From Hydrolagus colliei (taxonomy: Eukaryota), in assembly GCA_035084275.1 (NCBI GenBank), contig CM068771.1, positions 5,332,644 through 5,396,000 of the forward strand: 63,357 bases of DNA, in the 5' to 3' direction. Shown in pieces: positions 11,881 through 62,729 of the stretch. The notes under the pieces are model-generated. The model did no database searches, had not been told where the DNA came from, and saw nothing but the letters and a program-made list of their open reading frames with translations. How positions within the stretch are numbered: the stretch's first letter is position 1; the number at the start of each line of letters is the position of its first letter. A program made the translations under genes and the position numbers.

Positions 11881-12776
11881 CACTCCTGATAGTCACAGTG
11901 ACATCTCTAACACAGTCTGATGGTAACTCCTCTGTATGTGGAGCTCCTGTGGCTCGGTGGTGAGAGCCGCTCACTCTCCTTACAAGTGTCAGACAGACCC
12001 GGGTTCGAATCCAGGCAGGTCCGGTCAGGGGCGAAANNNNNNNNNNNNNNNNNNNNNNNNNNNNNNNNNNNNNNNNNNNNNNNNNNNNNNNNNNNNNNNN
12101 NNNNNNNNNNNNNNNNNNNNNNNNNNNNNNNNNNNNNNNNNNNNNNNNNNNNNNNNNNNNNNNNNNNNNNNNNNNNNNNNNNNNNNNNNNNNNNNNNNNN
12201 NNNNNNNNNNNNNNNNNNNNNNNNNNNNNNNNNNNNNNNNNNNNNNNNNNNNNNNNNNNNNNNNNNNNNNNNNNNNNNNNNNNNNNNNNNNNNNNNNNNN
12301 NNNNNNNNNNNNNNNNNNNNNNNNNNNNNNNNNNNNNNNNNNNNNNNNNNNNNNNNNNNNNNNNNNNNNNNNNNNNNNNNNNNNNNNNNNNNNNNNNNNN
12401 NNNNNNNNNNNNNNNNNNNNNNNNNNNNNNTCCCTCCCAAAAAAAGCCACAATAATAAAAATTGGTCATTTTCAACCCACGGCTGTTTGTAGGTGGGGGG
12501 GGGGACGGGGACGACGACGACGGACGCTGCTGTGCGCAAATGTCTGCCGCGTTTCGCCCACAAATATACGTACATACAGTCACTACACTTACAGTGCATT
12601 CTGCGAAGCGCTTTGAGACGTCGCTATGATGTGACAAAAAAAAGCGGTATCAAATGCCAGGACTATTATCGTGATATTATTTACGTGTCTCCGTCCGTCT
12701 TTCCCTCTATCGCTCTGTCTCCCCCTCTCCCCCCCCCCTCTCTCTCCCCCTCCCCCCCCCCCCTCTCTCTCTCTCT

Positions 12777-12813
<37 letters not shown>

Positions 12814-12832
12814 TGTCTCTCTCTGTCCATAC

Positions 12833-13021
12833 CTGGAGGCTTTTCTCCTTGTGTGTGATGATGTTGAGTAGTCCGTCCAGCCGAGTTTGCTGCTGGCAGC
12901 TCGTCTGTCTCCGCTCTTCTAGACACCGACTCAACAAACTCTCCTTGTCCTTCAGACTCGCGCGCAGACTGGCCGAGACATCAGGGCCCCCTCTCAGTCC
13001 CCGGCCCGGGACAGTCAACGC
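12833..13021 (-). CDS. Coiled-coil exon (ALTVPGRG...LKDKESLLSRCLEERRQTSCQQQTRLDGLLNIITHKEKSLQ)
   Basis: ctctctcag| and |gtatgg, 189 bp, phase 0-0. It joins in frame to the 11060-11251 exon. Confidence 0.65.
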
Positions 13022-14351
13022 CTGAGAGAGAGAGAGAGGGGAGAGAGAGAGAGAGAGAGAGAGAGTCAGAGAGAATAATATTCATAATAATAATAATAAT
13101 CCTTGCATTTGATGTGAGAGAGAGAGAGTCAGAGAGAATAATATCCATAATAATAATAATAATCCTTGCGTTTGATGTGGCGCTTTTCACATCTTATCGA
13201 CGTCTCAAAGCGCTTCACAGACTAGACTGTCAAGTGAAGTGACTGTATGTTTTGTGGGCGAAACGCGGCAGCCGATTGCGCACAGCGGCGTGTGTGTGTG
13301 TGTGTGTGTGTGTGTCCCCCCCCCCCCANNNNNNNNNNNNNNNNNNNNNNNNNNNNNNNNNNNNNNNNNNNNNNNNNNNNNNNNNNNNNNNNNNNNNNNN
13401 NNNNNNNNNNNNNNNNNNNNNNNNNNNNNNNNNNNNNNNNNNNNNNNNNNNNNNNNNNNNNNNNNNNNNNNNNNNNNNNNNNNNNNNNNNNNNNNNNNNN
13501 NNNNNNNNNNNNNNNNNNNNNNNNNNNNTGTGTTTTACATGAATAACCTGATCTCTTTGTGAGTTATTCCACGACACCTCCGCCCGCCCCACTCAGTGGT
13601 TAGAGCCACTTACGTAAGATCTGTGTTCGAATCCAGGCAGGTCAGGGGGACGTCTCTCCGATGTGGACAGTCACTGCTTCAGACCCGAGCTGGGGACGGA
13701 GGTGGGGAGGGAGGGAAGGTGGGGGGGGAGGGATTAGGAGTTGCCGATGGGACCATCGAAGAGGAGAGTCTTGAGGTGGAACATGAAGGAGGCCTAGGGA
13801 GGGGGGGGGAGTGGGGGGGGGGGTGGGGGGCGAAGGCAGCTGTAGTCCTGGAGTCGAGGGTAGAGGGCAGAGAGAGAGAGTTGGGTGTCATCCGCATACA
13901 CACCGAATAATAAAATAATAATTCCCTCCAAAAAAACACAATCATAAAAATTGGTCATTTTCAACCCATGGCTGTGCGTATGGGGGAGACGCTGCTGTGC
14001 GCAATCGGCTGCCGCGTTTCGCCCACAAATATATACAGTCACTTCACTTTACAGTGTATTCCGTGAAGCGCTTTGAGACGTCGATCAGATGTGAAAAACG
14101 CTGTATCAAATGCAAGGATTATTATTATTCTTTGTGGTAGTTAACCCCACGTCTGCCAAGTGGGAGCACTGTGAACGTCGAAAAGTAAGGGGGGCTCGAG
14201 GATAGAGCCCTGGGGGGGGGGGGGGGGGGAAGCCACAGGTGAGGTGAGGGTGCGGGGGCCTGAAGACAGAAGTGTAGACGATGTGCTCAGGCTCTGTGTT
14301 ATTGTAAAGCTGTTTCGTTGAGTAACCCCCCTCTCTGTTTACTCCGCGCAG

Positions 14352-14508
14352 GTGACTCTGGTTGACGCCCCGAATCCTCACCTGTTTGTCAGGCGGTTCA
14401 GGGGAAGTCCAGGACATCCCTGCGGGAGGCCGAGGCCCTGATCACCAGCCTGACACGAGACAACCAGAGTTTCAACCCCAACCAGTACTACATCATTTCC
14501 TATCCAAG
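14352..14508 (+). CDS. Exon of unrecognised gene, SOUL/HEBP2-like C-terminal segment, with one frameshift
   Basis: ctccgcgcag| and |gtgacg. VTLVDAPNPHLFVRRFRG switches, at a GGGG run one base short, to KSRTSLREAEALITSLTRDNQSFNPNQYYIISYP. By eye this resembles the SOUL pattern VFVRSFDG...L..L...L..D...F....YY...Y.S. Confidence 0.45.
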
Positions 14509-15899
14509 GTGACGAACGAAACCTGTCCGTCCGCGTCCACTTCAGCGAACCGGAGTCCTGTGGTTAGAGCGCTGGCCTCGCAAAGCCAGAGGACGCGGGT
14601 TCGATTCCCGGGGGGCTTGGGCAAGATCTGAATCTAGGAAGAGAGAGGTGGGTGTGGGGGGGGGGGGGGGGGAGGGGAGGCGAGGAGAAGGGAGTGAGGA
14701 AGGGAGTTCCAGAGATTGGGGGGGGGGGGGGGCGTAGCGGCTGAAGGCAAGGCCGACGATGGTGGAATGGAGGATTCGGGGGGCGGGGGGGGCGGGGGGC
14801 AAGGAGGAGACAAGATGGATTTTATGGATTGTGGTGGAGGGGAGAACCAGCGAGGAGGGCGTGTGCGCAGTCCAGCCGAGAGGTGACAGAGGCCTGATAG
14901 TGTCGGAGTCTGAGCTGGGGGAGAGGGGAGGGGAGGGGAGGGGAGGGGAGGGGAGGGGAGGGGAGGGGAGGGGAGGGAGATTCAGTCGAAGAGGAAGGTC
15001 TCTGGTCACGGTCCAAAAGAGGGGGGGGGAGGAGGGGACGAGGCAGAGGGATTGAGGGAGAGAGTTCCACAGTTTCTGAGGGCGGGGTAGCGGCTGAAAC
15101 CACGACAAGAACAAACATCAAATTTGCATTTGTAGACAGCCTTTCACGCCCGGAGGATGTCCCAGGGCGGAGGGGAGGGGACGAGGGCCGCACGGGAGGC
15201 CAGGGTGGAGGCCGTGGACAGCGGGCTGGGGGAGTGAGGAGTAAGTAATAATAATAACAATCCTCTCGTTTGATAAAGAGCGCGTTTCACATCTCATCGA
15301 CGTCTCAAAGCGCTTCACTGAATAAAGGCTGTAAAGTGAAGTGACTGCATATGTGTTGGGCGAAACGCGGCGGCCAGTTGCGCACGGCAGCGTCCCTCCC
15401 CCCCCCCCCCCCACACACACACACACACACACGGTCGTGGGTTGAAACCACCGATTTTTAATTACATTGTGGTTTTTTGGGGGGACGGAATATTATACTG
15501 AGAATATAATAATAATAATAATAATAAAAGAAAGAGAGACTAAGAGAGAGACTGAGAGACTTAGAGACAGAGAGACTGAGATTTAGAGAGAGTGTGTGTG
15601 TGTGTGTCTGAGAAACTGAGACAGAGACAGTGTGTGTGTTTGTGAGCGTGTGTGTGAGAGACTGTGAGAGATAGACACTGAATGTGTGTGTGTGTGTGTG
15701 TCTGTGAGAGAGAGACACTGTGTGTGTGTGTGTGTGTGTGTGTGGAGTAAGGAAACTTGCCCAAGGTTTTGCCCTGACCTGCCAGGATTCGAACACAGGC
15801 CTCACCTGGCTTGGTAAGGCGAGTGAGTGGCTCTAACCACTGAGCTACAGGCGCTGTATCAAATGCGAGGATTAATCCCTGTTGTTGTGTTACGCTCAG

Positions 15900-16436
15900 C
15901 GTGGCTGGGATCCCCGAGTCCTGGCGCAGACCTGCCCTCGGCCTCCCCCATGTGGATCCCCTGGAGGAACTCTTCAGCACTGACCCTCTGGCCGAACGCG
16001 GACGCTTCGGGGACGAGGAGGAGGAGGAGCGAGGCCCCTGGAGTGGGAGGAGAGACGGAGGGAGGCTGAGGGACGGGCGGGAGGCGGGAGGGAGAGGCCA
16101 GAGAGAGCACGGCCAGAGATGGGGGGGCCACCAAGATGACCACCAGGATAGCCGCCGCGGCCACCAAGATGGCCGCCAGGGCCACCAAGATGGCCGCCAG
16201 GGCCACCAAGATGACCGCCAGGGCCACCAAGATGGCCGCCAGGGCCACCAAGATGGCCGCCAGGGCCACCAAGATGGCCACCAGGGCCACCGAGGCCGCG
16301 GGCATCATGGCGACCGAGGCCTTGGGGGCGGCCGAGGCCACGGGTATCACGGCAACCAAGGCCGAAGGCCCGGGGGCCGTTGGGGAGACGAGGAGGAGAG
16401 GAGGAGGGACCATGCCCCCCACAGGCCCGGACCCCG
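15900..16436 (+). CDS. Low-complexity exon: acidic run plus 21-bp tandem repeats (GHQDGRQ)n
   Basis: ttacgctcag| and |gtgagt, 537 bp. The phase 2-2 frame is open end to end and matches the phase-2 donor at 14508. Confidence 0.6.
16126..16292. repeat. 21-bp coding minisatellite GGCCACCAAGATGGCCGCCAG, about 8 copies
   Basis: Directly visible. Confidence 0.9.
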
Positions 16437-16956
16437 GTGAGTCGAGAGAAGAATAATCATTGTTAATAATAATAATAATAATCATAATAATACTGAGCGT
16501 CTGCGTTGACCTCGGCTCCTCCTCACAACCTCGAGACGGGTCAGAGTCAGAGCGCGTCACACGACTGTCAAAGCCGGTTGTCTGTGAAGCGCTTTGAGAC
16601 GTACATAAGGTGTGAAAAGTGCTGCGTCAAACACCAGGACTAGTATTATTATTATTATTATAGACACAGAGACAGACACAGAGACAGAGACTGAGACAGA
16701 CGGACATAGGGCCNNNNNNNNNNNNNNNNNNNNNNNNNNNNNNNNNNNNNNNNNNNNNNNNNNNNNNNNNNNNNNNNNNNNNNNNNNNNNNNNNNNNNNN
16801 NNNNNNNNNNNNNNNNNNNNNNNNNNNNNNNNNNNNNNNNNNNNNNNNNNNNNNNNNNNNNNNNNNNNNNNNNNNNNNNNNNNNNNNNNNNNNNNNNNNN
16901 NNNNNNNNACAGACAGAGAGAGAGAGTTGGGGGTGGTGGTGAGGCAGGAGGTTGAC

Positions 16957-17312
16957 CCGGACCCTCCGTCCAACAGGACTTGTCCTGCTCCAAGCCCCCC
17001 GCCCGAACCGCCCCCCCACGATCGGAGGCCGGGCCTTCAGTTTCTCCGCTCCCACCCTATGGAATGCCATCCCTCAATCCCTCCGTTTCGTCTCTTCCCT
17101 TTCCTCTTTCAAGGCCGGTTTGAAGACTTTCCTCTTCGATCGTGCCTTTTGTTCCCCACCCCCCGAACTCTTTTACCTCCCCTTCGTGTCTCACCCCTTC
17201 CCAAACACTCCCCTCCCAGCTCGGGTCACACGCCTCCTGTGCAGCGCCTTGGGACGTCCTCCCGAGGTGAAAGGCGCTCTATAAATGTAAATTGTTGTTG
17301 TTGTTGTTGTTG
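16957..17312 (+). mobile_element. L2 LINE 3' fragment
   Basis: Translates to [31 protein letters not shown]. It has the tail GCGCCTTGGGACGTCCTCCCGAGGTGAAAGGCGCTCTATAAATGTAA(TTG)n. Confidence 0.8.
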
Positions 17313-17354
17313 AGGATGGATGGCTTGTGTGATGTGTGCCTTGTTGTATCCCAG

Positions 17355-17430
17355 CTCTGCTCAGTGCCAGCGGAATGAGGTGTGTTTCAGTGCGAGTGGA
17401 AATCCTGTCTGTCCTGAGCAGCCCGAGTGA
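17355..17430 (+). CDS. Candidate last exon (SAQCQRNEVCFSASGNPVCPEQPE*), follistatin-N/EGF-like Cys spacing
   Basis: gttgtatcccag| acceptor in phase 2, TGA at 17428-17430, and AATAAA at 17510-17515. Confidence 0.5.
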
Positions 17431-17878
17431 GCGGATCCCTGTCAGTGACTCTGGGACTCGCTCCCACATCAACAACAACAACATACACTGAGCGGCCTGG
17501 AGCGTTGGGAATAAAGTACCAACTCTAACAATGTAAACTCTTAACAATCTCTCGCTCTCTCTCTTTCGTTCCCTCCCTCCTTCCTATTCCCCACCATCCT
17601 CCACCTTCTCTCATTCTGTCTCCCTCTCCCCTCCATCTCCTCCCTCCCTCCCTCCCCTTCTCTCTCCCCCGGTTTTCTCTCTCATTTCCTCTTCTCTTTC
17701 CCTCCCTACCTCTCCCCTTCTCTCTCTTCCCCCCTCTCTCTCTCTCTCTGCCCACCTCTCCGTTCTTTGTTGATTCACTGACTTTTCGCAATGAAAATTT
17801 ATTAGTTCATCAACTTCTTGCGTCTTTCAAACATCTCACAGCATTTCGCACCATTAACAATACAACAGCAATACTTGT

Positions 17879-17983
17879 GGAAGCTCCTGTGGCTCGGTGG
17901 TTAGAGCCACTCGCCTTCCAAGCGTGAGACCTGGGTTCGAATCCAGGCAGGTCAGGGCAAAACCTTGGGCAAGTTTCCTTACT

Positions 17984-18018
<35 letters not shown>

Positions 18019-18495
18019 CCTAATAATAAAAGAGAGAGTGACAGAGACAGACAGAGAGAGAAAGAGAGGGAGGGAGTTAGAGAGAGGAGGGAGTGAGTTA
18101 GAGAGGGAGGGAGTGAGTTAGAGATGGAGGGAGTGAGTTAGAGATGGAGGGAGTGGGTTAGAGAGGGAGGGAGTGAGTTAGAGATGGAGGGAGTGGGTTA
18201 GAGAGAGGAGGGAGTGAGTTAGAGAGAGGGAGTGAGTTAGAGATGGAGCGAGTGAGTTAGACAGGGAGGGAGTGAGTTAGACAGGGAGGGAGTGAGTTAG
18301 AGAGGGAGGGGAGGGTTTGAGAGAATAAAACCACAATAATAAAATCAGGTCATTTTCAACCCACGACTGTGTGTGTGTGTGTTTGTGTGGGGGGAACGCC
18401 GCTGTGCGCGATCGGCTGCCGCGTTTCGCCCACAAATATATAAACAGTCACTACACTTTACAGTACATTCTGTGAAGCGCTTTGAGACGTCGATG
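17879..18495 (+). mobile_element. tRNA-derived SINE expanded by internal (CA)n and a 20-bp GA-rich array
   Basis: Head with A/B boxes at 17884-17945, repeats at 17986-18320, then the body and the GTGAAGCGCTTTGAGACGTC tail. Confidence 0.8.
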
Positions 18496-21539: not shown

Positions 21540-22081
21540 CTAAAACTTCACTGGGCAGAGTGTCAGAGGCCCAGAGTTTTTCACGTCAAAATTATCCCAG
21601 GGATTGAAGAGAGGATAGAGTTTCCCAGTGAAAGTGTCGGGGAAAGTGTGGAGATGAGACATGTGATCAGCGTCGTAAAATGACACCTGTCCCCCCTCAT
21701 AGTCCAGGTAAACTCCGACCTTCCCGGGTCTCGCTGTCAGGGGCAGGGGGGTGAGAGGTGACGTCACAGCCCAATAGACCCCGTCCACCTGCCTCACTGC
21801 CCAGAGCCCACCCTCTGGTGACAATGTGATTTGTTGATTCCTGTTGACAGACTCGCTGATGAGTCCCACAGTCCACCTTGTCTTGTTCCCCACCTGCACC
21901 TCCCAGTAATGTCTCCCTGATGTGAAGCCCTCAGATGCCAGGACCACAAAATATTCGCTAAACCTCTTTGGGTTGTCAGGGAGATGCTGCTGTTTGTATT
22001 TGTATCTCACGCTGGTCAGGTCTTTGGATAGGATGAGCCAGGCATTGGCTGTGTCAGGATCCAGAGTCAGAGAGGCTGGAG
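21540..22081 (-). CDS. BTN-A exon 7: B30.2 (PRY-SPRY) domain
   Basis: ctctctcag| acceptor in phase 1. Reads [13 protein letters not shown]...[12 protein letters not shown]...[17 protein letters not shown]...LYPLFNP...CPVKF*. Confidence 0.92.
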
Positions 22082-22174
22082 CTGAGAGAGAGAGAGAGAG
22101 AGAGAGAAATAACACTATGTGGGAGTGAGTAGGGGGCATGTGAGGGTATTGTGAGGTCTGGCCCGTCTCCACTG

Positions 22175-22633
22175 GCTCCCCATCCTCCAGAGGATCGAGT
22201 TTAAGATCCTCGTCCTCACCTACAAAGCCTTACACGGCCTTGCCCCATCCGACCTAACCGATCTACTCTCCCCCCACAAGCCCACCCGGACCCTCCGTTC
22301 AACAGGACTTGTCCTGCTCCAAGCCCCCGCCCGAACCGCCCCACCATCGGAGGCCGGGCCTTCAGTTTCTCCGCTCCCACCCTATGGAATGCCATCCCTC
22401 AATCCCTCCGTTTCGTCTCTTCCCTTTCCTCTTTCAAGGCCGATTTGAAGACTTTCCTCTTCGATCGTGCCTTTTGTTCCACCCCGAACTCTTTTACCTC
22501 CCCTTCGTGTTTCACCCCTTCCCAAACACTCCCCTCCCAGCTCGGGTCACACGCCTCCTGTGCAGCGCCTTGGGACGTCCTCCCGACGTGAAAGGCGCTT
22601 TATAAATGTAATTTGTTGTTGTTGTTGTTGTTG
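22175..22633 (+). mobile_element. L2 LINE 3' fragment
   Basis: [27 protein letters not shown] motif and an L2 tail. Nearly identical to 16957-17312 over about 350 bp. Confidence 0.85.
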
Positions 22634-22836
22634 ATTGTGAGGATGTATGTAGGGTGGGAGTATGTAGGGGTGTGTATGGATCGATGCATGTGGGGGGGGG
22701 GGGGGGGGGGGGAGCGATGCACGTGTGTGGGGGTAGGGCTGTGTGTGGGGGTGCACTGTGTGCGGTGGGGGGGTGCTGTGTAGGTGGGGGAGGCTGTGTG
22801 TGGGGCAGCTGTGTGTGTTGAGGGGGCTATGTGTGT

Positions 22837-22867
<31 letters not shown>

Positions 22868-23560
22868 GAGCTGTAGGTGTGGGGTTGCTGTGTGAGTAGG
22901 GGCGCTGTGTATGATTCTGTGAGGGTGTGGGGGAGGTGTTGAGGGTGCTGTGAGGGTGTGTGGGGCGGAACGTGACGATGTGCGTTTGCGGGCGGAGGGA
23001 AGGGAGTATGACGCAGGTGAGGTGATATAGTTGGAAACTTCAATATTTTTCCTGTGTTGTAGTATAATACTGTTGTTGTCGTCACATTGTACATAAACAG
23101 GGACGTGTGAATTGTCAGACAATCGGTGACTGAAATTCAACAGCAAATGACTCAAAAAACTGAAACCGAGAATCTTAAAAGCCAATCTGTTTTGCTGGCT
23201 GTTTTCCTCTCACCTTTTAATGAACTTTTCTGATATTTTCACAGTGACACTTCTACCTCATTGTCTCGTTTGGTCCCCAAAATATAGTCAATTCACTCTA
23301 CAGTATATTCTGTGAAGCGCTTTGAGACGTCGATAACACGTGAATAGAGCTGTGTCGCTGTATATAGCGATAATAATAGGATTATTATTTGGATTATTAT
23401 TTTACTGCGCCTTCCACAATTGCCGTGTCCACTCTACACATCACTGACCAATCTGTCACCGATCGCTGGAGTTCCGTTCACGGTGATCAGTCCCAGAGTT
23501 TAGCAACGAATGGGGCAGGTTTATGTGACTATTGCGTTCTCTGGTGACCGAGACTCTTAC

Positions 23561-23587
23561 CTGCACAGTTGGTAAGCTTTCTCCTGT
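23561..23587 (-). CDS. BTN-A exon 6: 27-bp exon
   Basis: ttcttgtttccag|ACAGGAGAAAGCTTACCAACTGTGCAG|gtaaga, phase 1-1. Confidence 0.85.
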
Positions 23588-38190: not shown

Positions 38191-39525
38191 GTAAGAGAAA
38201 ATATTTTATCACGTAGATTTTCGTTTAAAAAACACAAGTTAAAAACACAAATTCCTTTCTGATTTTCTCCCTGTCTGGCGTCCTCTCATGGGGTATGTTT
38301 TCCCTTTATATCATTGTGAAGTCCTTAGCAATTCCTCCACCTCGCCCCCTCCCTAGCCTCCTTCAAGACCCTCCTCTTCGACCTTGCCATCAATCAGCCC
38401 TCTTCCTTCCACCCTCCCCGATCCTAACACCAGCTCGGGTCCAAAACACTGTCTATCCGGCACCTTGGGGCGTCCTCCCGACATGAAATACAAAATACAA
38501 CGAGCTATACAAATGTAATTTAGTTGTGGTTGTTTTTAGCCTCTCAAGTGAGAGGACCCAGGTTTGATTCCTGGGTTCGATTCCCAGATGGGGCAATCCA
38601 CACGCCTCTGTTTACCTTCTGCACGCAGTAAATAGTAACCCAGTTGTTAGTCGATTGGCGGGTAATAATCCCTTTTTAAAAAATCCCCCCCAAATAATAA
38701 TGACTCAATCCACGCCAGTTTGTGGAATTGGCTGCCACATTTCTCCTTCAAAACTTTACAGTACATACTGTACATCCTTTGAAGATCTTTGCGATGTATC
38801 CAGCCCGTGAAAAGCGCTATAACAAATGCAAATGACTTATCATGTGGTTAAGACTCAGAGTTTCACATAATACACTGTAAAGTGAAGCGACTGTATATTT
38901 ATTGAGCAATTCCAACGCTTGAGGTGCTAAGAGCGTTTGTGTCGATGGATCAAGGGCTTATCATGTCTTCTGGACGTCCCAAAGCGCTTCACAGAAGTGA
39001 ACTGACTGTATATTTTGCGGCAGCCAATTGCGCACAGCAGTTGCCCACAAACGGCGTGGATTGAAATAAGCAATTTATTGTTGTTTCATTTCTTGAGTGA
39101 TTATTATGACTCACGCAATGTCATTAGTCGCACTCTCACCTCCAAGTCAGAAGTTTGTGAACTGAACCCACAACCTTCATTCGATACACCGCCGTATCAC
39201 ATCAATGAGGTATCTCAAAACACTTTGCAGAATATTATTGTAAAATGAATTGACTGTATATTTAGTGGGAGAAACATGGCAGCCAATTGCGCACAGCTGT
39301 GTCCTACAGTCGTGGATTGAGTGACCAAATTATCAGTATTTATTTGTGAGGGAAAAGTGCCAATCGACTAACAACCGGGTTTGTACTCACTGCCAAGCAA
39401 ACAGAGGTGTATGGGGTAAGGAAAGTTGCCTAAAGTTTTGCCCTCTCGGTTATTATTATTATTGTTGGATGAGACAGTGTGTGATTCAGAAAATCCTGAC
39501 TATTTCCGTTGTTTAATCCATTTAG

Positions 39526-39876
39526 ATGAGAAATTCACAGTCACAGGCCCCGCTCAGCCTGTCCAAGGCTTTGTTGGCTCGGACGTTGTCATGGACTGTA
39601 AGTGTTCCGTGGGGTTACCACTGCAGAGAGTGGAGGTGAGATGGTTCAGAACAAACTTTGCCAGCCCTGTGCACCTCTTCCAAGACGGACACACTAATAC
39701 AATCAAACAAGATATAACCTACACGGGCAGAACACAACTGTTTACAGAGGAGTTTATCAACGGCAATATGTCTCTCAAACTCAAAGACTTGAGGCGGTCA
39801 GATACAGGAGAGTACACCTGTTTCATCGAGGACCAGCCATCGCATGAAGAGACAAAAGTAGAATTACAAGTCCAGG
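39526..39876 (+). CDS. BTN-B exon 2: IgV domain
   Basis: ccatttag| and |gtaggt, 351 bp. Reads DEKFTVTGPAQPV...DCKC...EVRWFR...PVHLF...GNMSLKL...DTGEYTCF. Confidence 0.93.
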
Positions 39877-40636
39877 GTAGGTAACATTATGGAGTCCCGT
39901 AGCTCAGTGGTTAGAGCTCCCGTCTCACAAGTGGGAGGACCTGGGTTTCGATTCTTGGGAAGCACAAAATGTTCGGTATGTTTCCTTACTCCTTATTCGA
40001 TTGGCAGATCACTTTCCAGGCGGTAAAGTGTGCACTTGGCTGCTGCATGTTGCCCCGAAAATGTACAGTGAATTCAGTATATTTACTGTATATTCTTTGA
40101 AGCGCTTTGAGACGTCTCGAGACACAGAAGACATAACAAAGCGCTATCTCAAATGCAAGGATTATTATTAATGTAATTGAAAGGGTTGAATTCCATCTTC
40201 AGACTGTATAAGAAACATGTTAGGTTACATACCCTGGACTTGAAACGCACATGTTAAGTGGGATTTTGATAAGAGTACATAACTGTTTCCTTTGATGGGT
40301 CGGTCAGTATCTAGAGGACACAGATTGAAGATAATTTGTAAGGGAACCAGTAATTCTTTCAAGAACAAGTTAGATAGATTTCTGTTAGCAAACAATATCT
40401 CGGAATACCACATATCAAGCGAGTGCCAGGATGGTGGAAGGTGAACCGGACAGACCTTGGTCTTCTTACGTCAGCAAGTTCTTAGTTCAAAAGTTGCTGT
40501 TGTTGTTTTTCGCTGCTGTTTACAAATGTACACACGCCTCCTGTGCAGCGCCTTGGGACGTCCTCCCGACGTGAAAGGCACTCTATAAATGTAATTTGTT
40601 GTTGTTGTTCACGTGGTGTTCCCTCTGTGCACCCAG

Positions 40637-40915
40637 TTTTTGGCAGTCAGCCTTGGATTCGCATGGAAGGATATGAAGGGAATGGGCTTAAACTGGTGTG
40701 CGAGTCTGAGGGATGGATTCCTGAGCCCGAGGTCTTGTGGGTGGATGGGAACGAGCGAAAACTGACAGCACAAACCAAATCAGAAACGTCTCCCGAAGGT
40801 TTCATCAAGGTCCAAACCTCCCTGATTGTCACAAAAGATTCCAGCAACAAGTTCAAGTGTCTGTTCATCAATAGTTTAACCAAGAAACAAACGGAAGGAA
40901 AAATCCAGATCGCAG
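40637..40915 (+). CDS. BTN-B exon 3: IgC domain
   Basis: gcacccag| and |gtcagt, 279 bp. Reads FGSQPWIRMEG...LVCESEGWIPEPEVLW...FKCLFINSL. Confidence 0.92.
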
Positions 40916-41415
40916 GTCAGTCCACATGTGATACTGGACCAGTTCAAGATCCTCATCCTCATCTTTAAAGCCCTCCACAGCCTCGCTCCTCCCTACCTCT
41001 GTAACCTGCAAAATGTCTGCTCCCTCAAGCCTGCTCGTGCCTGTTCCACGTCCCCCACCCTCCCTGCCTCACCAGCAGCAGTCACGCCTTCAGCCACTCT
41101 GTCTCCATCCTCTGGAAATCTAACCCAGAGCCTCTCGTTCCCTCCCTCGCCTCCTTCCAAGCACATGTCAAGCTCCTCCTCTTTGTTTTATTTTCATAAT
41201 CCCCTCAGAAATAAATGATAATTTGGTCACGACTGTTTGTGGGACCCTACTGGTCATAATTAGCTGCTGCGTTTTGCCTACAAAATACTTTATTGTCTAC
41301 TCTGTGCTGGTCTTCTACTCTGTGCAGCATCTTGAGACGTCTCGAAGACCTGATGAAACGCAATATCAAATGCAAGGATTCCAAAACTAATCCAGATTAT
41401 TATTTTTGCTTCCAG

Positions 41416-41532
41416 ATGATCTTTGCCCCAGTGTGTCTCTGCTGCTGGTCCTTAGTTTGTTATTCTTCATTTTCCTGGCCGCAATGGGTGCAATCTTGTT
41501 CTTCTTTTGGAAGAAATACAAGCAAACCGAAG
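41416..41532 (+). CDS. BTN-B exon 4: transmembrane exon
   Basis: ttgcttccag| and |gtacgt, 117 bp. Reads DDLCPSVSLLLVLSLLFFIFLAAMGAILFFFWKKYKQTE. Confidence 0.9.
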
Positions 41533-41636
41533 GTACGTTCCAATCCGAATCCTGGAATCCCAACCATTCCGGGCAGATCCCTACCTCTGTGTTATTCCGG
41601 AAGCCCATTTTGGGATTCACACCTGCCTACAATTAC

Positions 41637-41975
41637 GAAGTCCCATAGTGCAGTGGTTAGAGTACTCGCCTCGCAAGCGGGAGGACCTGGGTTCGATTCC
41701 CAGGAAGGGCAACACCTTTAAGGGCAAGTTTCCTTACACCACACGCCTCCGTTTGCCTAATAGTAAGCAGAAACCCAATTATAAGTCAATTGGCGGATCA
41801 CTTTTCCCGAGGTAATAATCCCTTTACTAAATAAAATAATTAATTGGGACAATTGGCTGCCACTTTTCCTCCACAAAATGCAGTCAATTCATTTGGAAGA
41901 ATATCCTATGAAGCGTTTTGAGATGTCTCAATGATGTGATAAGGTGATGTTTCAAATGCAAGGATTATTATTGTT
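41637..41975 (+). mobile_element. tRNA-derived SINE (older, near full length)
   Basis: tRNA-like head with A/B boxes, a central conserved block and a GCAAGGATTATTATT tail. Confidence 0.75.
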
Positions 41976-42115
41976 CTATTAATGTGCCCATAATTATATT
42001 GTGGTTCTGTGTACAGTAGCTGGCTCCCAATTTACCAGCAGAGGATTTCACACATTGTAGTTGGAAATGGAAGCCATGTGATTAATACACATTTTACTTT
42101 CTTTTTACCCAACAG

Positions 42116-42133
42116 ATCTTAAAAAAGAACTCG
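42116..42133 (+). CDS. BTN-B exon 5: 18-bp heptad micro-exon
   Basis: ttttacccaacag|ATCTTAAAAAAGAACTCG|gtaagt, phase 1-1 (DLKKEL). Confidence 0.85.
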
Positions 42134-42932
42134 GTAAGTTACAATAACAAAATTACATTTGGATGGCGCCTTTCACATCAGTTGGACGTACCAAGGCGCT
42201 GGAGGGTCAATGTTTCAGACCTGAGCTGGGGTCAGGATCGGGGAGGGGTGGAGGGAAAGGAGGGCCCGATGGGACCATTGGGGGCTGCAAGCTCCTGTCA
42301 CACATACAATGTCGCCTGATTTACCAGCATGTCTGTATCAGTCTCTACCTCTGAGGCTCTGATCAGTCTCTGCCTCTCAATCTCTACTCTCATGGTATAG
42401 TTTAGTGGTTAGATCACTGATCTCGCAAGCTAGATTCCTGGGCAGGGCACAACATCAGGCAGATTTCCTTATTCCGCATGACTCTGTTTACCAACAGTAA
42501 GTAGGAACCCGTTTGTTAGTCAGTTGGCAAGGATAATTATCCCTTAAAAAAACCAATAATAATAATTTTGGTCACTCAATTTATGACTGTTTGTGGGACA
42601 CAGCTGTGCGCAATTTGCAGTCACATTTTGCATAAAATATATGGTCAATTCACTTGTAAATACATTCTATGAACCGCTTTGAAGTCTTTGGAAGACATGT
42701 TAAGGCGCCATATCATAAGAGCATAAGAAGTAGGAGCAGATTCAGCCCATCGAGCCTGTCCCGCCATTCAATCATGGCTTCCTGCATAATCCCCATATCC
42801 CTTAAAACACTTAATAAATGAGAAATCTATCAGTCGCTACAATTCGGGAATATTACTATAATTATTATTATCTGCCTTCTTATTAGTCACCACCAAAGCC
42901 CTTATTGGCTGTTTGTTTGACTTTTGTTACAG

Positions 42933-42959
42933 AGTCGGAAAGGATGTTTGTCTATGCAG
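42933..42959 (+). CDS. BTN-B exon 6: 27-bp exon
   Basis: ttttgttacag|AGTCGGAAAGGATGTTTGTCTATGCAG|gtaaga, phase 1-1 (ESERMFVYA). Confidence 0.87.
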
Positions 42960-43564
42960 GTAAGAGACCTTTTACCTCAAACAAAATCACTGCAGCCTAA
43001 TTACAGTAATACCTCTCCTTCCGTTAAACTCCATTTGCTACAGCTCAGCCCATGTGCTTGAATCCGTCCTTGTCTTGTTTGCTGTCTTGTGCGCCGTTTG
43101 CAAACAACACCCCCCTCCCCATCTTAGCGTGTGAGCCTGGCTCAGTGTCGGCCTCTTGAATCAGACGGTTATGAGGTCAAGGCTCCACGACGGGACTTGG
43201 GATCACAGTCTAAACTGCTCCAGTGCAGCACTGGGTGGGGGGTGATGGATTGTCGGAGACACCGTCCTTTGGATGAAACATTAAACCGAGATCCCGTCTG
43301 CCTGTCCAGGTAGATGTTAAAGATCTCCCGCGGCGCTATTCAAAAAGAGAAGGGAGTTTCTCTCTCTCCTGGTGTCCTGGCAGACCATCCAGTCGCCTTG
43401 AGATAAAGGACGCCTTTTGATCACCTTTTGTCCTGTGAGATTGGATTCAGAATGAATGAAGGAAAGAAAAAATAAATGGGTCACTCAACTCAATCCACCA
43501 GTGTTTGAGGAGGGTCTTCTGTGAATCCATTTGAGGCGTCTCGAAGACATGGAGATATTATTGT

Positions 43565-43905
43565 GGAGCTCCTGTGGCTCAGTGGTTAGAGCACTTGTCT
43601 TGCAAGCTGGGGAGACCAAGCTGGGGAGACCTGTGTTCGAATCCAGGCAGGTCAGGACGAAACCTTGGGCAAGTTTCCTTACTCCACACGCCTAATAATA
43701 ATCCGTCAAACAAAAACCACAATAATAAAATTGGTCATTTCAATCCACGGCTGTTTGTGGGGGACGCTGCTGTGCGCAATTGGCTGCCGCGAATCGCCCA
43801 CAAACATATACAGTCACTTCACTTTACAGTATATTCTGTGAAGCGCTTTGGGACGTTGATAAGATGTGAAAAGCACAATATCAAATGCAAGGATTATTAT
43901 TTATT
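43565..43905 (+). mobile_element. Full-length tRNA-derived SINE (best-preserved copy, about 340 bp)
   Basis: A box TGGCTCAGTGG, B box GTTCGAATCC, the body, the tail GTGAAGCGCTTTG..GATGTGAAAAGC..AAATGCAAG and an (ATT)n end. Confidence 0.88.
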
Positions 43906-44121
43906 ATATAATTTTGATTATTCAAAGCGCTTCACAGAATACACTGTAAAGTGTAGTGACTGTATATTTTGTAGACGAAACGCAGCAGTCAACCCAGCAG
44001 TGCCCCACAAACAGTTGTGCATTTAGTGACCAATTTCTTGTGTATAATGGATTATGCATTAGGTATTTTTTTAAATTTAATAATAATTATTGTCAAATTA
44101 ATGATGTGATTTTGGCTCTAG

Positions 44122-44672
44122 TTAAAGTCAGACTGGATCCTGACACGGCCCATAACAAGCTTGTGGTGTCTGAGGACCTGACCAGCGTTTCAGCCGGAGA
44201 GAAAGATCAGCTGCTCCCTTACTCCCCGAAGAGGTTTAGTTACTGGGCCAGTGTCGTGGGATCTGAGAGCTTCACATCAGGGAAGCGTTACTGGGAGGTG
44301 CAGGTGGGCAGCAAGATTGAGTGGAGCTTGGGGGTGGTCAGAGGGTCCATGGAGAGGACAGCGGAGGTCACACTATCACCAGGGAACGGAATCTGGACTG
44401 TGATCCTCAGAAACGGGAACAATTATTGGGCCCGTGACAACCCCTGGATCCGCCTGACCGTGGAGGTGAAGCCCAGGAAGGTGGGAGTGCTCCTGGACTA
44501 CGAGGGAGGGAAGGTGTCGTTCTACAACGCTGACAACATGTCTCATCTCCACACTTTCACTGATTCCTTCACAGAGGCAATCTACCCTTATTTCTGCCCC
44601 TGGTTTCTTGACGGTGGGAGAAACTCCGAACCGCTGGTAATCTGTCCGGTTGAGAGTAAACTGAGAGCTTAA
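44122..44672 (+). CDS. BTN-B exon 7: B30.2 (PRY-SPRY) domain
   Basis: tttggctctag| acceptor in phase 1. Reads VKVRLDPDTAH...FTSGKRYWEVQV...VGVLLDYEGGKVSFYNA...IYPYFCP...KLRA*. Confidence 0.93.
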
Positions 44673-54784: not shown

Positions 54785-55654
54785 GTGTGGTCGGCGCCTT
54801 GGGATGTCCTCCCGATATGAAAGGCGCTATAGAAATGTAATTTTGTAGTTGTTGTTGCGTTCAGCCAGTCAGTCAATCTCATAATGAACACCATTTGACC
54901 TAGTCTGGTTCCTGAGCCAGGTGGGTCTGCAGCATTCCAGGGCATTCACTGCTGATGACAGCACAGCCCGGTCTGGCTCAATGGCACGACTTAATTAAGC
55001 AATTAAGGATTTTGTTGGCAATAGAAGAACAAGGTCCACACAGTTCGTCTTCCACCATCCAGGCAGTCACTGGGCAGGTCGTGTTCCAAACTATACACTG
55101 TATCCCAGATATTCAAGACTGTTTGTGGGTACACTGCTGTGCAGAATTGGTTGCCTCGTTTCGGTCACAAATATACAGTCAATTCACTTTACAGTACATT
55201 CTGTGAAGTGCTTTGAGACATCGATAAGATGGGAAAAACACTATTTCAAAGGCAAGCATTATTATTATTATTTCCTACCAGAAATGTATCTAATTTGTCC
55301 TTGAAATAAGTGACAATTTCTGCCTCCACCATCTCCCTATGGAGCCTGATCCATACATTTACTATTTGCTCACTGAAATAGTGTTTCCACAGATTTGTTT
55401 GGAATTTACCCCTTTCAATCGCAGGCCCTACCCTCTGCTTCTACTCTTCAGTACAAGATAAAACAGCTTGTTTTGTCAGTCACTGAAAGCAGAGAATCCT
55501 CCCATCAGCTCCTCTTACAAGCTAAAGGTCAAGTGACAGTGCAGTGACAGTGCTTAGTGAGCCCAGCCAGGGTTTGGCTTGTGTTTAAGCTATTGGCTCT
55601 GATTTGTTTTGCTGCTTGGATTCTCACTGTCTTCTATTCCTGTTTCACTTCCAG

Positions 55655-56008
55655 TTCTTCAACTCCTCCAACTATGCGTAATATTACCTCTGGCCTCTCC
55701 CAACACTATCATCAATGTCTCCATCAAGGCTGATGCCTCTTTCCGTGTCCTACGTCCCGTCAATCAAGACCATGAGGTTCACCTGGAAATGAAGTCTCCC
55801 TTTAACCTCAAAATAATGATATGGGGATCAGAGCAGTCAGATAGACTGTACTTTATTCACTCCAGCTACAGGGACAGAGTTCACTATCTTGGGGGTGATT
55901 TTATACAGTTGAGGAATGTAACTCTCAATGACAATGGGAGATATAAGATCATCATTAGAGATGTTCTAGGAAACACAGAGAGCCACTGGTTTGATCTGCA
56001 TGTATTTG
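55655..56008 (+). CDS. CD2/SLAM-family gene exon 2: rest of leader plus Cys-less IgV domain
   Basis: tcacttccag| and |gtgagt, 354 bp. Reads YRDRVHY...IQLRNVTLNDNGRYKI...FDLHVF. Absence of the V-domain disulfide is typical of the CD2/SLAM family. Confidence 0.85.
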
Positions 56009-57210
56009 GTGAGTACATTTTGACTGGATTATTATTATTGTCCATAGGAACAGGAGGAGACCATTCAGTCCCTCAAGCCTGTTCTGTCATTCAATATAAT
56101 GATGGCCAAGCTGTACTTGCTCCATATCCCTTGATAACCTGACGTGATGTAACAAAAACCTACAGACTCATTCTTGAAAATGTGAATGATCCCACCATAA
56201 TCCACAGCCTTTTTGTGGGGAGAGAGAGTTCCAGATTCCACGACTTGTGTGAAAAGTGTTCCTTGATTTCACTCCTAAATGGCCTCGCTCTAATTTGAAG
56301 ATGACTGACTCCCCTTGTCCTGGGGCATCAGAAGAAACAGAGGAAATAGGGAGATACAGAGAAACCATCTGGAAAAGTGTCCCTCTTGTTATTCACACTC
56401 TCTATCCCCACACTCGTACTCCATCCCGCAATCCCTTTGCCTCTCTTCCTCCCTTTCCTCCTTCAAGGCCGGTCTCAAGACTTTCCTTTTCAACCGTGCC
56501 TTCTGCTCCCCTCCAAACTCTCCCCCCTTTCCTATTCTCCTTCAGGACCCTGCCCCTACCCCGACCCTTCCCCCACTGCTTGAGTCTTGACCTAAATGTT
56601 CAGTGCCTTGGAACGTCCTCCCGACGTGAAAGGCGCCCTATAAATTAAATTTTGTTGTTGTTGTTGTTGTTGTAGTTCAGGGCCAGCTTAACCTGTAAAC
56701 CAGGTAATGCATGGGTTAGGGTCCAGAGGGTCTGAGGGATCCGGGTTTGATTGACATCTTCACTTCCGGGCTGTGCCTCTCTTCCTGTTGCTCTCCATAA
56801 TGAAACTGGCCTTGAGTGGCAGCAAATGTGTTCCTCTAGCTGTCACTCACGGTATTGCCCTTCACCGGGTGCAGGTGACAGGGCTGGAGGGGCAGGTCTG
56901 GGGGCTGGAGGGGCAGAGCTGGAGGCTGGAGGGGTGGGGCTGGAGGTGTCAGTCAGTCCTCCCGCAGGTCAGGTTTGGGGACAATGATAATAAGTGACAT
57001 TTACACACAGCCTTTCATGTGGGTAGGACATCACAAGGCGCAGGACAGTCAGTGAATTGGAACTGAATTGGTGGTTGGGATCAGTGTGTGGTAAGTGGGG
57101 TGGGGGTAGAAAGATGGTTCAAGGCTTAGTCGAAGAGGAGTTTGAAGGAGGAGCGAGATGGAGGGACTTCGAGAGGCTGAAGGCCTGACTTTATAACCTT
57201 TGTGTTTCAG

Positions 57211-57471
57211 ACCCCGTCTCCCAGCCGATGGTGGAGATGGCCAGTGATTGCTCAGCCAATGTCAGTCTGAGCTGCTCTGTCTCCAAAGGAACAAATGCCA
57301 CCATTTATTGGAGGAAGAGATTGGAGCCTAATGTGACGTTTGATGGGTATGTGCTGCTGCTGAATCCTGACAGTGTGGAGCAGGCAGCCGAGTATGAGTG
57401 TGTAGCAGAGAACCCGATCAGTCAGGAGATCAGTCGCCCACAACAGCCGTGTCACGAGAATCCAGGCCAAG
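57211..57471 (+). CDS. CD2/SLAM-family gene exon 3: IgC2 domain with four Cys
   Basis: tgtgtttcag| and |gtgaga, 261 bp. Reads DPVSQP...DC.ANVSLSCSV...IYW...YECVAENPISQE...PC. Confidence 0.9.
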
Positions 57472-58229
57472 GTGAGAGAGCCGTCAACATTACACACTGA
57501 ATTAGAGCAGCTCTGTCAGAATGGGCCTCACTATAGCATGGATTTGTTTCCCGTGATTCCATGCTTGTGCAACTGCTCACTTCCAGTTTGCCGGCCACCT
57601 TTCAGAAATGGCCAATGTTTAGTGATCAGGTCACCATCAACATTACTTCCTGCTCAGTCCATAAAATAGTCAAGTCCTGTTTTATGCGCAGGCTCCATGA
57701 ATTGACCACCGCCATCCTCGCTCGGCCCCACTGGCTCCCCATCTCCCCAGAGGATAGAGTTCCAAATCCTCATTCTTCCCTTCAAAGCCCTCCACAGCCT
57801 TGTACCTCATACCTTTATGACCTGCTGACCCCATATCAACCTGCCCACTCTATCCGGACCTCAGGAGGCTCTGGGTTGCTCTGCAGCCTGACCCACCATC
57901 AGCTGTCTGGCCATCAGCCTCTCTGCCTTCATACCCATTGGAACTCCATCCCACAGTTCCTTCACCCCGCTCCCTCCCTTGCCTCCTCCAGGGGCCATGT
58001 TGGGTCCCTTATCTTCGACCACATCATCAGACACCCTCCTGATCACAAACCCCAACTCAGGTCCAAATCCATGGAAACTTGCCTAAGGTTTCAATCCATC
58101 CGGGAGTTGAACCCAGGTCCTCCGACTTGCGCTCTAACCACGACACCACAGGATTCCCACCTCTGACAAACCGTTTCCGGTTACAAATCCTGGTTTACAA
58201 TAATAATCACTTTTTTTCCTTCCCCTCAG

Positions 58230-62725: not shown

Positions 62726-62729
62726 CACC

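What the first reader, a model, noticed from the sequence alone, without database searches (positions are those of the whole stretch)
14352..17530. Unrecognised gene: SOUL/heme-binding-like segment, His/Gly/Gln repeat exon and Cys-motif terminus
Three plus-strand exons link in consistent phase (0-2, 2-2, 2-stop, then AATAAA) if one base is restored in a GGGG run. The product is a SOUL/HEBP2-like segment, an acidic DEEEEE run, about 8 GHQDGRQ repeats with a His-rich flank, and C-x4-C-x8-C. I know no protein with this architecture. A putative heme-binding fold joined to a His-rich repeat, inside an immune cluster, suggests heme or metal scavenging (nutritional immunity). That function is speculation, and the SOUL match is by eye only.
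Basis: partly seen in the sequence, partly recalled or inferred. Interest (0 to 1): 0.7.

Follow-up and report, generated by a model that had tools for sequence, protein, structure and literature searches.

The report
Broken HEBP2/SOUL gene fragment, not a gene
The stretch holds a real but partial and frameshifted remnant of a heme-binding-protein-2 (SOUL) gene, cut by about 2.8 kb of mobile-element DNA, and the His/Gly/Gln "exon" is most likely just a GC-rich tandem repeat in that DNA, so this is an ordinary pseudogene fragment and not a new immune gene.

Summary
The SOUL resemblance is real.

Only the last ~75 residues of the ~190-residue protein are present. No N-terminal SOUL sequence occurs in any frame of the readable 63 kb. 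The reading frame breaks in a GGGG run.

The sequence runs straight across the site where bowfin, bichir and lizard HEBP2 carry intron 3 (TGTTTGTCAG|G). That is the mark of an intronless, retrocopy-like, 5'-truncated copy.

The "Cys-motif terminus" is probably the last SOUL strand (QRNEV). It is separated from the rest by 2.85 kb made largely of SINE copies and low-complexity sequence, bracketed by an 8-bp direct repeat (TATCCAAG/TATCCCAG).

The His/Gly/Gln "exon" lies inside that interval:
- It is 71% GC, against 42-53% in the Ig and B30.2 exons nearby.
- It contains a 21-bp minisatellite.
- It has no homolog beyond heptad-repeat matches among 1.84 billion proteins.

The assembly gap is intronic in every model and sits in a simple repeat.

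The three-part architecture and the heme/metal-scavenging idea are not supported. Transcript data could still overturn this.

The parts
14352..14404 (+). SOUL/HEBP2-like segment A, frame 0 (VTLVDAPNPHLFVRRFRG). It corresponds to HEBP2 residues ~118-135 and runs uninterrupted across the canonical exon 3|4 junction (14392|14393).
   Evidence: Pfam alignment starts here at profile position 103. These residues add 7.5 bits to a local HEBP2 HMM; p=0.0015 against random peptides and 0.019 against peptides from pyrimidine tracts. TGTTTGTCAGG occurs once in the window and equals the spliced junction of bowfin HEBP2. Pogona has TTTGTCAG|gt and bichir TTTGTGAG|gt at the same site.
14401..14404 (+). GGGG run where the SOUL reading frame shifts from frame 0 to frame 2. 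In HEBP2 this site encodes the conserved Gly-Gly (GGG GGG in bowfin).
   Evidence: Three-frame translation. Comparison with the bowfin coding sequence.
14405..14508 (+). SOUL/HEBP2-like segment B, frame 2 (KSRTSLREAEALITSLTRDNQSFNPNQYYIISYP). It corresponds to helix alpha-2, the BH3-like region and the next strand of HEBP2. An in-frame TGA follows immediately if the sequence is read on.
   Evidence: It is the only piece of 2727 six-frame pieces to hit a local HEBP2 HMM (E 0.013). TSLTRDNQSF aligns to TSLTRDGQQF of bichir HEBP2. GC at codon positions 1, 2 and 3 is 0.41, 0.44 and 0.79, a coding-type asymmetry.
14501..14508 (+). Left copy of the 8-bp direct repeat, TATCCAAG.
   Evidence: It matches TATCCCAG at 17347-17354 at 7 of 8 positions. 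Resampled chance is 0.005-0.008.
14509..17346 (.). It contains: a tRNA-like SINE head (~14554-14612); a degenerate reversed SINE (~14724-15169); a reversed SINE (~15240-15855); the unique GC-rich stretch; a SINE tail plus simple repeat (~16500-16713); the gap; and a SINE at 16955-17314.
   Evidence: Self-similarity depth and copy coordinates. 16955-17314 is a 95.5% copy of 22284-22634. No terminal inverted repeats were found.
15900..16436 (+). It has good splice-like sites (…gttacgctcag| and |gtgagt).
   Evidence: No Pfam family. The only hit in 5.8 billion proteins is a heptad-repeat match. All 32 hits among 1.84 billion representatives cover only query residues ~60-146, mostly 80-135, which is the repeat; none reaches residues 1-59 or 147-178. 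Each of the six frames has an open stretch of 83-255 codons here. Minus-strand ORFs have no Pfam hit.
16140..16291 (+).
   Evidence: Tandem Repeats Finder: 94% matches, score 262. Repeat family D5.
16714..16908 (.). Assembly gap, non-coding in every model, flanked on both sides by an (AGAC/AGAG)n simple repeat.
   Evidence: Sequence. Repeat family D3 links 16644-16714 to the same tail structure at 15519-15581 and 18021-18083.
17347..17354 (+). Right copy of the 8-bp direct repeat, TATCCCAG. In the genomic frame it reads ..YPS.. directly ahead of SAQCQRNEV.
17355..17430 (+). Probable displaced C-terminal end of the SOUL reading frame (SAQCQRNEVCFSASGNPVCPEQPE, stop at 17428-17430). QRNEV aligns to the family's terminal RxNEVW strand.
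   Evidence: It adds 5 bits to the Pfam SOUL score and extends the match to profile position 172 of 173. It aligns to HEBP2 NRNNEVWL in the PDB. The motif [RKHNQ]NE[VIL][WFYC] occurs once in all six frames of the window, here. Weak point: it adds only 2.9 bits with the HEBP2-specific HMM and ranks 39 of 513 AG-preceded candidates.
17510..17515 (+). AATAAA, 80 nt after the stop, followed by an A-rich but not poly(A) stretch.
   Evidence: Sequence.

Best explanation
This is a non-functional remnant of a HEBP2/SOUL-family gene. It is an intronless (cDNA-like, so most likely retrotransposed), 5'-truncated copy that keeps only the last ~75 codons.

It has one frameshift, in the G-run that encodes the conserved Gly-Gly.

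Its reading frame was later split after ..YYIISYPS by about 2.85 kb of foreign sequence bracketed by an 8-bp direct repeat. That interval is now a mosaic of SINE copies, simple repeats and one GC-rich minisatellite-bearing stretch.

The His/Gly/Gln 'exon' is that GC-rich stretch. It is open because of its composition and its 21-bp period, not because it codes.

The 'Cys-motif terminus' is the displaced final strand of the SOUL domain plus its stop and polyadenylation signal.

Shown: the SOUL homology, its partial extent, the frameshift, the missing canonical intron, the repeat content, and the lack of homologs for the repeat segment.

Inferred: a retrocopy origin, an insertion event rather than an intron, and lack of expression.
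For: SOUL homology:
- Pfam SOUL is the only family hit, covering profile 103-172 only.
- The PDB hits are HEBP2 only.
- Identity is 38% to bichir HEBP2 and 18% to HEBP1.

Missing N-terminal part:
- None of 87 plus-strand pieces upstream hits SOUL.
- A HEBP2 HMM run without filters on 2727 six-frame pieces hits only 14366-14509.

Broken frame:
- The frame is broken as assembled.

Missing canonical intron:
- In bowfin, bichir and Pogona, intron 3 is phase 2 at TTTGT(C/G)AG|G, and the last exon runs uninterrupted to the stop.
- The window reads CTGTTTGTCAGGCGGTTCAGGGG straight through that site.
- The 11-mer TGTTTGTCAGG is unique in the window.

The split:
- Joining the two flanks restores one continuous frame, KSRTSL..YYIISYPSSAQCQRNEVCF..*.
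- The 8-bp direct repeat has p~0.005-0.008.
- The interval is largely SINE copies, simple repeats and G-rich low-complexity sequence.

Segment 2:
- It has no family and no homolog outside the heptad repeat.
- It is 71% GC against 42-53% in the Ig and B30.2 exons nearby. The weak RING piece is 64%. Each of the six frames has an open stretch of 83-255 codons.

Database check:
- No protein of 103-450 aa in 5.8 billion matches the SOUL part or the three-exon model. Bony-vertebrate HEBP2 proteins from NCBI are in that collection. I do not know whether the source genome's annotation is included.
Against: - Segment 1 has a good acceptor in front. All three segments have usable AG/GT sites in consistent phase. 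Segment 2's sites are strong (|gtgagt; pyrimidine tract plus cag|) and the best of their kind in the interval.
- The interposed sequence begins with GT, as an intron would.
- The frameshift sits in a homopolymer and could be an assembly error.
- About 2.9 kb of the 14.3 kb upstream is unread, so a short N-terminal exon could hide in a gap.
- The link between segment 3 and SOUL is modest with the HEBP2-specific HMM (+2.9 bits, rank 39 of 513).
- DNA-level similarity to bowfin HEBP2 is only borderline overall (p~0.05).
- There is no clean poly(A) tail and no flanking duplication of a retrocopy.
- No cartilaginous-fish SOUL paralog was available to check whether some paralogs natively have this exon structure.
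Confidence: 0.62

Rival explanations
1. These are the terminal two exons of a real, lineage-specific SOUL paralog. Segment 1 is spliced directly to segment 3 and the repeat segment stays intronic. The 5' exons lie in assembly gaps or beyond the window, and the frameshift is an assembly error.
For: The segment 1 + segment 3 join passes the Pfam SOUL gathering score (28.2 against 27) and reaches the end of the profile. The splice sites and phase are consistent. Segment 1B keeps a coding-type GC3 bias. A stop and AATAAA follow.
Against: No N-terminal SOUL sequence is found in 14 kb upstream or anywhere else in the window. A RING-like open frame on the minus strand lies upstream at 3.7-4.5 kb (weak Pfam hit, E 0.0037). 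The exon structure differs from HEBP2 at both boundaries, and the canonical intron 3 is missing. The frame is broken as assembled. No matching protein exists in 5.8 billion.
Confidence: 0.12
2. A three-exon 3' part of an unrecognised gene encodes a SOUL segment, a His/Gly/Gln heptad repeat inserted before the last strand, and a Cys-containing tail.
For: All three segments link in phase 0-2, 2-2, 2-stop. Segment 2 has the best acceptor/donor pair among 172 phase-compatible candidates. Heptad repeats of similar composition exist in real proteins elsewhere.
Against: It needs a corrected frameshift. Segment 2 interrupts the SOUL fold between its last two strands. Its open frame is explained by 71% GC and a 21-bp period, and two antisense frames are longer. 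Its non-repeat flanks (query residues 1-59 and 147-178) have no homolog among 1.84 billion representatives. No annotated protein of 141-450 aa has this architecture. Most of the SOUL domain is absent.
Confidence: 0.06
3. This is a genomic (unprocessed) partial duplicate of only the last HEBP2-like exon. cctcacctgtttgtcag| would be the canonical intron 3 acceptor, and the upstream VTLVD..LFV resemblance would be chance from translating a pyrimidine tract.
For: An acceptor-like sequence sits exactly at the canonical intron position. Most of the upstream score comes from LFVR alone. Pyrimidine-tract peptides reach the observed score in 2 of 108 cases.
Against: The 8 nt before the junction are identical to the exon 3 end of bowfin and Pogona (TTTGTCAG), and the preceding CTCAC also matches bowfin. 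I estimate roughly 0.003 for a random acceptor to do this. This is my own rough figure from typical acceptor base frequencies, not a computed result. The Pfam alignment extends through all 18 residues. The frameshift remains in this model too.
Confidence: 0.08

Closest known systems
HEBP2 / SOUL (heme-binding protein 2; Pfam PF04832; PDB 3R8J, 4AYZ)
   Same: There is collinear similarity to HEBP2 residues ~118-183: the FVRxFxG strand, helix alpha-2 with the BH3-like stretch (TSLTRDNQSF against TSLTRDGQQF in bichir), YYxxxY, and the terminal RNEV. The fragment is closer to HEBP2 than to HEBP1.
   Different: Only the last ~40% of the domain is present. There is no MTAPV-containing N-terminal part, a frameshift, no intron 3, and an interruption before the last strand. 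Identity to any HEBP2 is only ~38%, whereas true orthologs are 45-60% identical from fish to human.
Processed (retrotransposed) pseudogenes of vertebrate genomes
   Same: The sequence is continuous across a conserved parental intron site. It is 5'-truncated, carries a disabling frameshift, was later invaded by SINEs, and lies in an unrelated gene neighbourhood.
   Different: No clear poly(A) tract or flanking target-site duplication survives. The parent gene was not available for comparison. The upstream boundary coincides with an acceptor-like AG.
Transposon-generated introns ('introners'; PMC9860276, PMC12130899)
   Same: The geometry matches. An inserted block is bracketed by a short direct repeat. 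Removing the block plus one repeat copy, from |GT to AG|, restores the original frame exactly.
   Different: Introners are multi-copy families that insert into many genes. Here the block is a unique mosaic of several SINEs with no terminal inverted repeats. The host frame is already broken, and no splicing evidence exists.
His/Gly/Gln-type heptad-repeat low-complexity proteins (the heterogeneous hits P0001 and P0122-P0126)
   Same: They share 7-residue repeats of the type xHxDxxx or GxQDSxQ.
   Different: The matches are confined to the repeat. The proteins are unrelated to each other and to SOUL. This is shared composition, not shared descent.

Membership tests
SOUL/HEBP family (PF04832), as a functional member | Profile match over the whole ~170-residue domain at or above the gathering score | tested here: not met
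   Only profile 103-172 is matched. The contiguous reader peptide scores 23.2 bits, below 27. A score of 28.2 is reached only after bridging the frameshift with X and joining segments 2.85 kb apart.
SOUL/HEBP family (PF04832), as a functional member | N-terminal part of the beta-barrel (YE.R.Y, F..L..YI.G.N, MTAPV) | tested here: not met
   No hit in 87 upstream plus-strand pieces, nor in 2727 six-frame pieces of the readable window with an unfiltered HEBP2 HMM. About 2.9 kb upstream is unread (N).
SOUL/HEBP family (PF04832), as a functional member | Intact open reading frame | tested here: not met
   No frame is open from the start to the end of 14352-14508. Whether this is an assembly error cannot be tested here.
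SOUL/HEBP family (PF04832), by descent (homology) | Significant, collinear sequence similarity to family members | tested here: met
   Pfam E 7.6e-5 and 2.3e-6. All five PDB hits are HEBP2, though each is individually weak (E~0.5). Identity to bichir HEBP2 is 25/66.
HEBP2 orthologue (canonical four-exon gene) | Phase-2 intron 3 at ..TVFVR|, and a last exon uninterrupted to the stop | tested here: not met
   Bowfin, bichir and Pogona all have it. The window is continuous across that site and is interrupted at a non-canonical site.
Heme-binding function | Heme or tetrapyrrole binding by the folded domain | not testable with these tools
   The fragment lacks most of the fold. Human SOUL showed no haemin binding by crystallography, UV-visible spectra or NMR in PMC3174058.
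Processed pseudogene | Absence of a parental intron | tested here: met
   Intron 3 is absent. The other introns lie outside the retained part.
Processed pseudogene | 3' poly(A) tract and flanking target-site duplications | tested here: inconclusive
   AATAAA at 17510 is followed by an A-rich but not homopolymeric stretch. The CT-rich flanks on both sides are too low in complexity to call a duplication.
Processed pseudogene | An intron-containing parent gene elsewhere in the same genome | not testable with these tools
   No access to the rest of the source genome.
Transposon-generated intron (introner-like) | Direct repeat at both ends, such that splicing restores the frame | tested here: met
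   TATCCAAG|gt ... TATCCCAG|. The joined flanks give one continuous frame.
Transposon-generated intron (introner-like) | Membership of a multi-copy element family, and evidence of splicing | tested here: not met
   The ends and the GC-rich core are single-copy in the window. No terminal inverted repeats. Splicing was not testable.

The most novel reading that the evidence does not exclude
The frameshift is an assembly error and the locus is transcribed. A retrocopied C-terminal piece of HEBP2 (the BH3-like helix and last strands) has been captured as exons of a lineage-specific gene in a butyrophilin cluster. An insertion bracketed by its own 8-bp duplication serves as a newly gained intron. 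A GC-rich minisatellite inside it is exonised as a His/Gly/Gln heptad-repeat cassette. That would be a vertebrate example of intron gain by insertion plus de novo exon birth.
Probability: 0.05. Interest if true: 0.55.

Novelty: new member of a known kind. Interest (0 to 1): 0.15.

Why it matters
It matters mainly for annotation. The locus should be labelled a HEBP2/SOUL-like pseudogene fragment, not a new immune or heme-scavenging gene, and the His-rich repeat should not be entered as a protein.

One small point of wider interest is the 8-bp direct repeat around the 2.85-kb interval. If an orthologous empty site or spliced reads were found, it would document either a dated insertion into a retrocopy or a rare insertion-made intron in a vertebrate.

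Tried and rejected
I searched stop-free pieces apart instead and ran a local HMM on pieces.
- A word-indexed search with the SOUL part, padded with X to allow full-length candidates, found nothing.
The HEBP2 sequence was later confirmed 100% identical to P0002. The hits include two just upstream of the fragment (14147-14224 and 14220-14291, E 17-22). They overlap a poly-G run, are not collinear and have no Pfam support, so I rejected them.
- A contiguous read-on after YYIISYP in a shifted frame (KVTNETC against KLTNRRNEVW) is an alternative C-terminus. It adds only 1.1 bits and is weaker than segment 3, so it is not adopted and not excluded.
- The peptide similarity between that read-on and segment 3 (NETCPSAS against NEVCFSAS) uses different Ser codon families, so I treat it as chance.
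- I considered that the whole 2.85 kb was one SINE with nested inserts. I rejected this because the 3' SINE copy has its own ends at 16955-17314.
- hAT-type terminal inverted repeats at the ends of the interval were not found.
- A stricter DNA alignment to Pogona HEBP2 was not significant, and my helper failed to rebuild the bowfin and bichir partial coding sequences.
- Paralogs of any of the three segments elsewhere in the window: none.
- Minus-strand ORFs across the repeat have no Pfam family.
Full report
**1. What is in the sequence**

- Segment 1 (14352-14508) follows ...ccgcgcag| and precedes |gtgacg. It reads VTLVDAPNPHLFVRRFRG in one frame and KSRTSLREAEALITSLTRDNQSFNPNQYYIISYP in another. 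The switch falls in GGGG at 14401-14404. As assembled, no frame is open through the whole segment.
- Segment 2 (15900-16436) follows ...gttacgctcag| and precedes |gtgagt. It holds GDEEEEER and a 21-bp tandem array (16140-16291, 7.2 copies, 94% matches) that reads GHQDGRQ.
- Segment 3 (17355-17430) reads SAQCQRNEVCFSASGNPVCPEQPE then a stop. AATAAA is at 17510-17515. The Cys spacing is C-x5-C-x8-C, not C-x4-C.

**2. The assembly gap**

The gap at 16714-16908 lies between the donor of segment 2 and the acceptor of segment 3. No proposed codon crosses it, so its length cannot affect any frame. Both flanks are the same (AGAC/AGAG)n simple repeat, which follows (ATT)n SINE tails at 15519-15581 and 18021-18083 as well. 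That is the usual place for a scaffolding gap.

**3. The SOUL call is right, but only part of the domain is there**

This is below the gathering score of 27. It covers profile 103-157 of 173.
- Joining segment 1 directly to segment 3 raises this to 28.2 bits, E 2.3e-6, covering profile 103-172. Segment 2 hits nothing.
- Against PDB sequences the only matches are five HEBP2 (human SOUL) chains. Query residues 5-66 align to HEBP2 134-198, with QRNEVCF opposite NRNNEVWL. Each hit is weak on its own (E~0.5), but no other protein appears.
- Pairwise, the fragment is 25/66 identical to bichir HEBP2 (TSLTRDNQSF against TSLTRDGQQF) and 10/55 identical to HEBP1.

The first ~100 profile positions are absent. 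None of 87 stop-free plus-strand pieces from 1-14438 matches SOUL at E up to 1. A local HMM built from 17 HEBP2 proteins, run without filters on all 2727 six-frame pieces of 12 residues or more, finds only 14366-14509 (E 0.013). About 2.9 kb of the upstream 14.3 kb is unread, so a short exon in a gap cannot be excluded.

**4. The gene structure is not that of HEBP2**

I fetched the HEBP2 loci of bowfin, bichir and the lizard Pogona. All three have four coding exons. Intron 3 is phase 2 and sits at ...TVFVR, with DNA ...TTTGT(C/G)AG|gt...ag|G. The last exon runs uninterrupted from there to the stop.

The window reads CAC CTG TTT GTC AGG CGG TTC AGG GG.. straight through that site. The 11-mer TGTTTGTCAGG, which equals the spliced junction of bowfin, occurs once on either strand of the window, at exactly the aligned position.

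The 14 residues before the junction raise the HEBP2-HMM score from 13.7 to 20.6 bits. The chance is p=0.0015 against random window peptides and 0.019 against peptides translated from pyrimidine tracts ending in YAGG.

So the copy is intronless where the family has a conserved intron. It begins inside what is exon 3 of the family. The simplest reading is a 5'-truncated retrocopy. The frameshift falls in the G-run that encodes the family's Gly-Gly (GGG GGG in bowfin).

**5. The 'intron' between segment 1 and segment 3**

The canonical last exon has no intron between GYDSP and NEVW, so this interruption is not ancestral.

- The last 8 nt of segment 1 (TATCCAAG) recur just before segment 3 (TATCCCAG). 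In the genomic frame the letters before segment 3 read LYPSSAQCQRNEV.
- A 7-of-8 repeat at such a pair of sites has a resampled chance of 0.005-0.008.
- Joining the flanks gives one frame...YYIISYPSSAQCQRNEVCFSASGNPVCPEQPE*.
- The motif [RKHNQ]NE[VIL][WFYC] occurs once in all 126,710 translated positions of the window, here.

Against this, segment 3 adds only 2.9 bits with the HEBP2-specific HMM. It ranks 39th of 513 AG-preceded candidates in the next 9.5 kb. I therefore rate the link as probable, not certain.

The interval itself (14509-17346) contains the following:

- a tRNA-like SINE head;
- a degenerate reversed SINE;
- a second reversed SINE;
- the GC-rich unique stretch;
- a SINE tail with simple repeat and the gap;
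- a SINE at 16955-17314 that is a 95.5% copy of 22284-22634.

No terminal inverted repeats were found. The block also starts with GT and ends with a good acceptor. The data cannot separate 'insertion with a target-site duplication' from 'intron made by such an insertion'. The latter geometry is the one known from introners (PMC9860276, PMC12130899).

**6. The His/Gly/Gln segment**

I found no positive evidence that it codes.

- It is 71% GC. The V-set, Ig-C and PRY/SPRY exons in the window are 42-53% GC.
- The interval offers 172 phase-compatible, stop-free AG...GT cassettes, 28 of them 300 nt or longer.
- Pfam finds nothing on either strand.
- The word-indexed search of 5.8 billion proteins with the full three-exon model returned one hit, a match of heptad repeats in an unrelated protein.
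- The exhaustive search of 1.84 billion representatives returned 32 hits. All are confined to query residues ~60-146, mostly 80-135, which is the repeat. They are unrelated proteins with GTQDSVQ, GHYDVKT or KHPDGRS repeats. None reaches residues 1-59 or 147-178.

**7. Function**

The fragment corresponds to one strand, helix alpha-2 with the BH3-like stretch, and the last strand or two. The full fold is an eight-stranded barrel with two helices (PMC3174058). It cannot form the fold alone. Human SOUL showed no haemin binding in that study. The heme/metal-scavenging idea therefore has no support. The neighbourhood is indeed immune: butyrophilin-like V-set, BTN3A2-like Ig-C and PRY/SPRY exons on both strands.

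**8. Verdict**

This is a broken, partial, intronless HEBP2/SOUL-like copy split by mobile-element-rich DNA. It is an ordinary pseudogene fragment. The three-part protein is most likely an artefact of linking open frames.

Three things keep this from certainty. The frameshift could be an assembly error. Parts of the upstream region are unread. There are no transcript or orthologue data.

Noticed in passing
21543-28652 (-) and 39420-44669 (+): There are two butyrophilin-like genes in opposite orientation. Minus strand: V-set 28158-28652, BTN3A2-like Ig-C 26692-27003 and PRY/SPRY 21543-22229, all by Pfam. Plus strand: PRY/SPRY 43950-44669 by Pfam; IgV 39420-39881, IgC 40486-40965 and a transmembrane exon ~41391-41645 by eye.
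   Followed up: partly
3688-4488 (-): An open frame with a RING-like Cys/His pattern gives a weak Pfam zf-RING_UBOX hit (E 0.0037, below cut-off). It may be the first exon of a TRIM-type gene running out of the window.
   Followed up: partly
55603-56139 (+), 57189-57497 (+), 62504-62860 (-): Further Ig-like exons are present. The second hits Ig_3/ig in Pfam and the first has no Pfam hit. A SPRY-like open frame near the window end was seen by eye only.
   Followed up: partly
17884-17954 (+): ARAGORN calls a tRNA-Gly(TCC). It is the head of a tRNA-derived SINE. Copies of this SINE, with an (ATT)n tail followed by (AGAC/AGAG)n, are scattered through the window in both orientations.
   Followed up: partly
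16955-17314 and 22284-22634: Two copies of a second SINE type with a (TTG)n tail are 95.5% identical, which suggests fairly recent activity. More diverged copies occur at 56421-56672, 62830-63038 and elsewhere.
   Followed up: partly
3117-16908: All 13 assembly gaps of the window fall in its first 17 kb. At least some, including 6253-6411, 6508-6703 and 16714-16908, sit in simple-repeat sequence. This part of the scaffold is much less reliable than the rest.
   Followed up: no
14147-14291 (+): Two chance-level tblastn similarities to HEBP1 (E 17-22) lie just upstream of the SOUL fragment. They overlap a 20-G run at 14214-14233, are not collinear and have no Pfam support.
   Followed up: yes
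18066-18310: There is a 20-bp minisatellite (GAGGGAGTGAGTTAGAGAGG, about 12 copies) just downstream of the finding.
   Followed up: no
11305-11724 (+), 31258-31557 (-), 63099-63356 (-): There are open frames with the ...FTQRVV..WNALPEKVVEA... pattern. By eye this looks like the C-terminal end of a retrotransposon (LINE-type) ORF. The one tested had no Pfam hit.
   Followed up: partly
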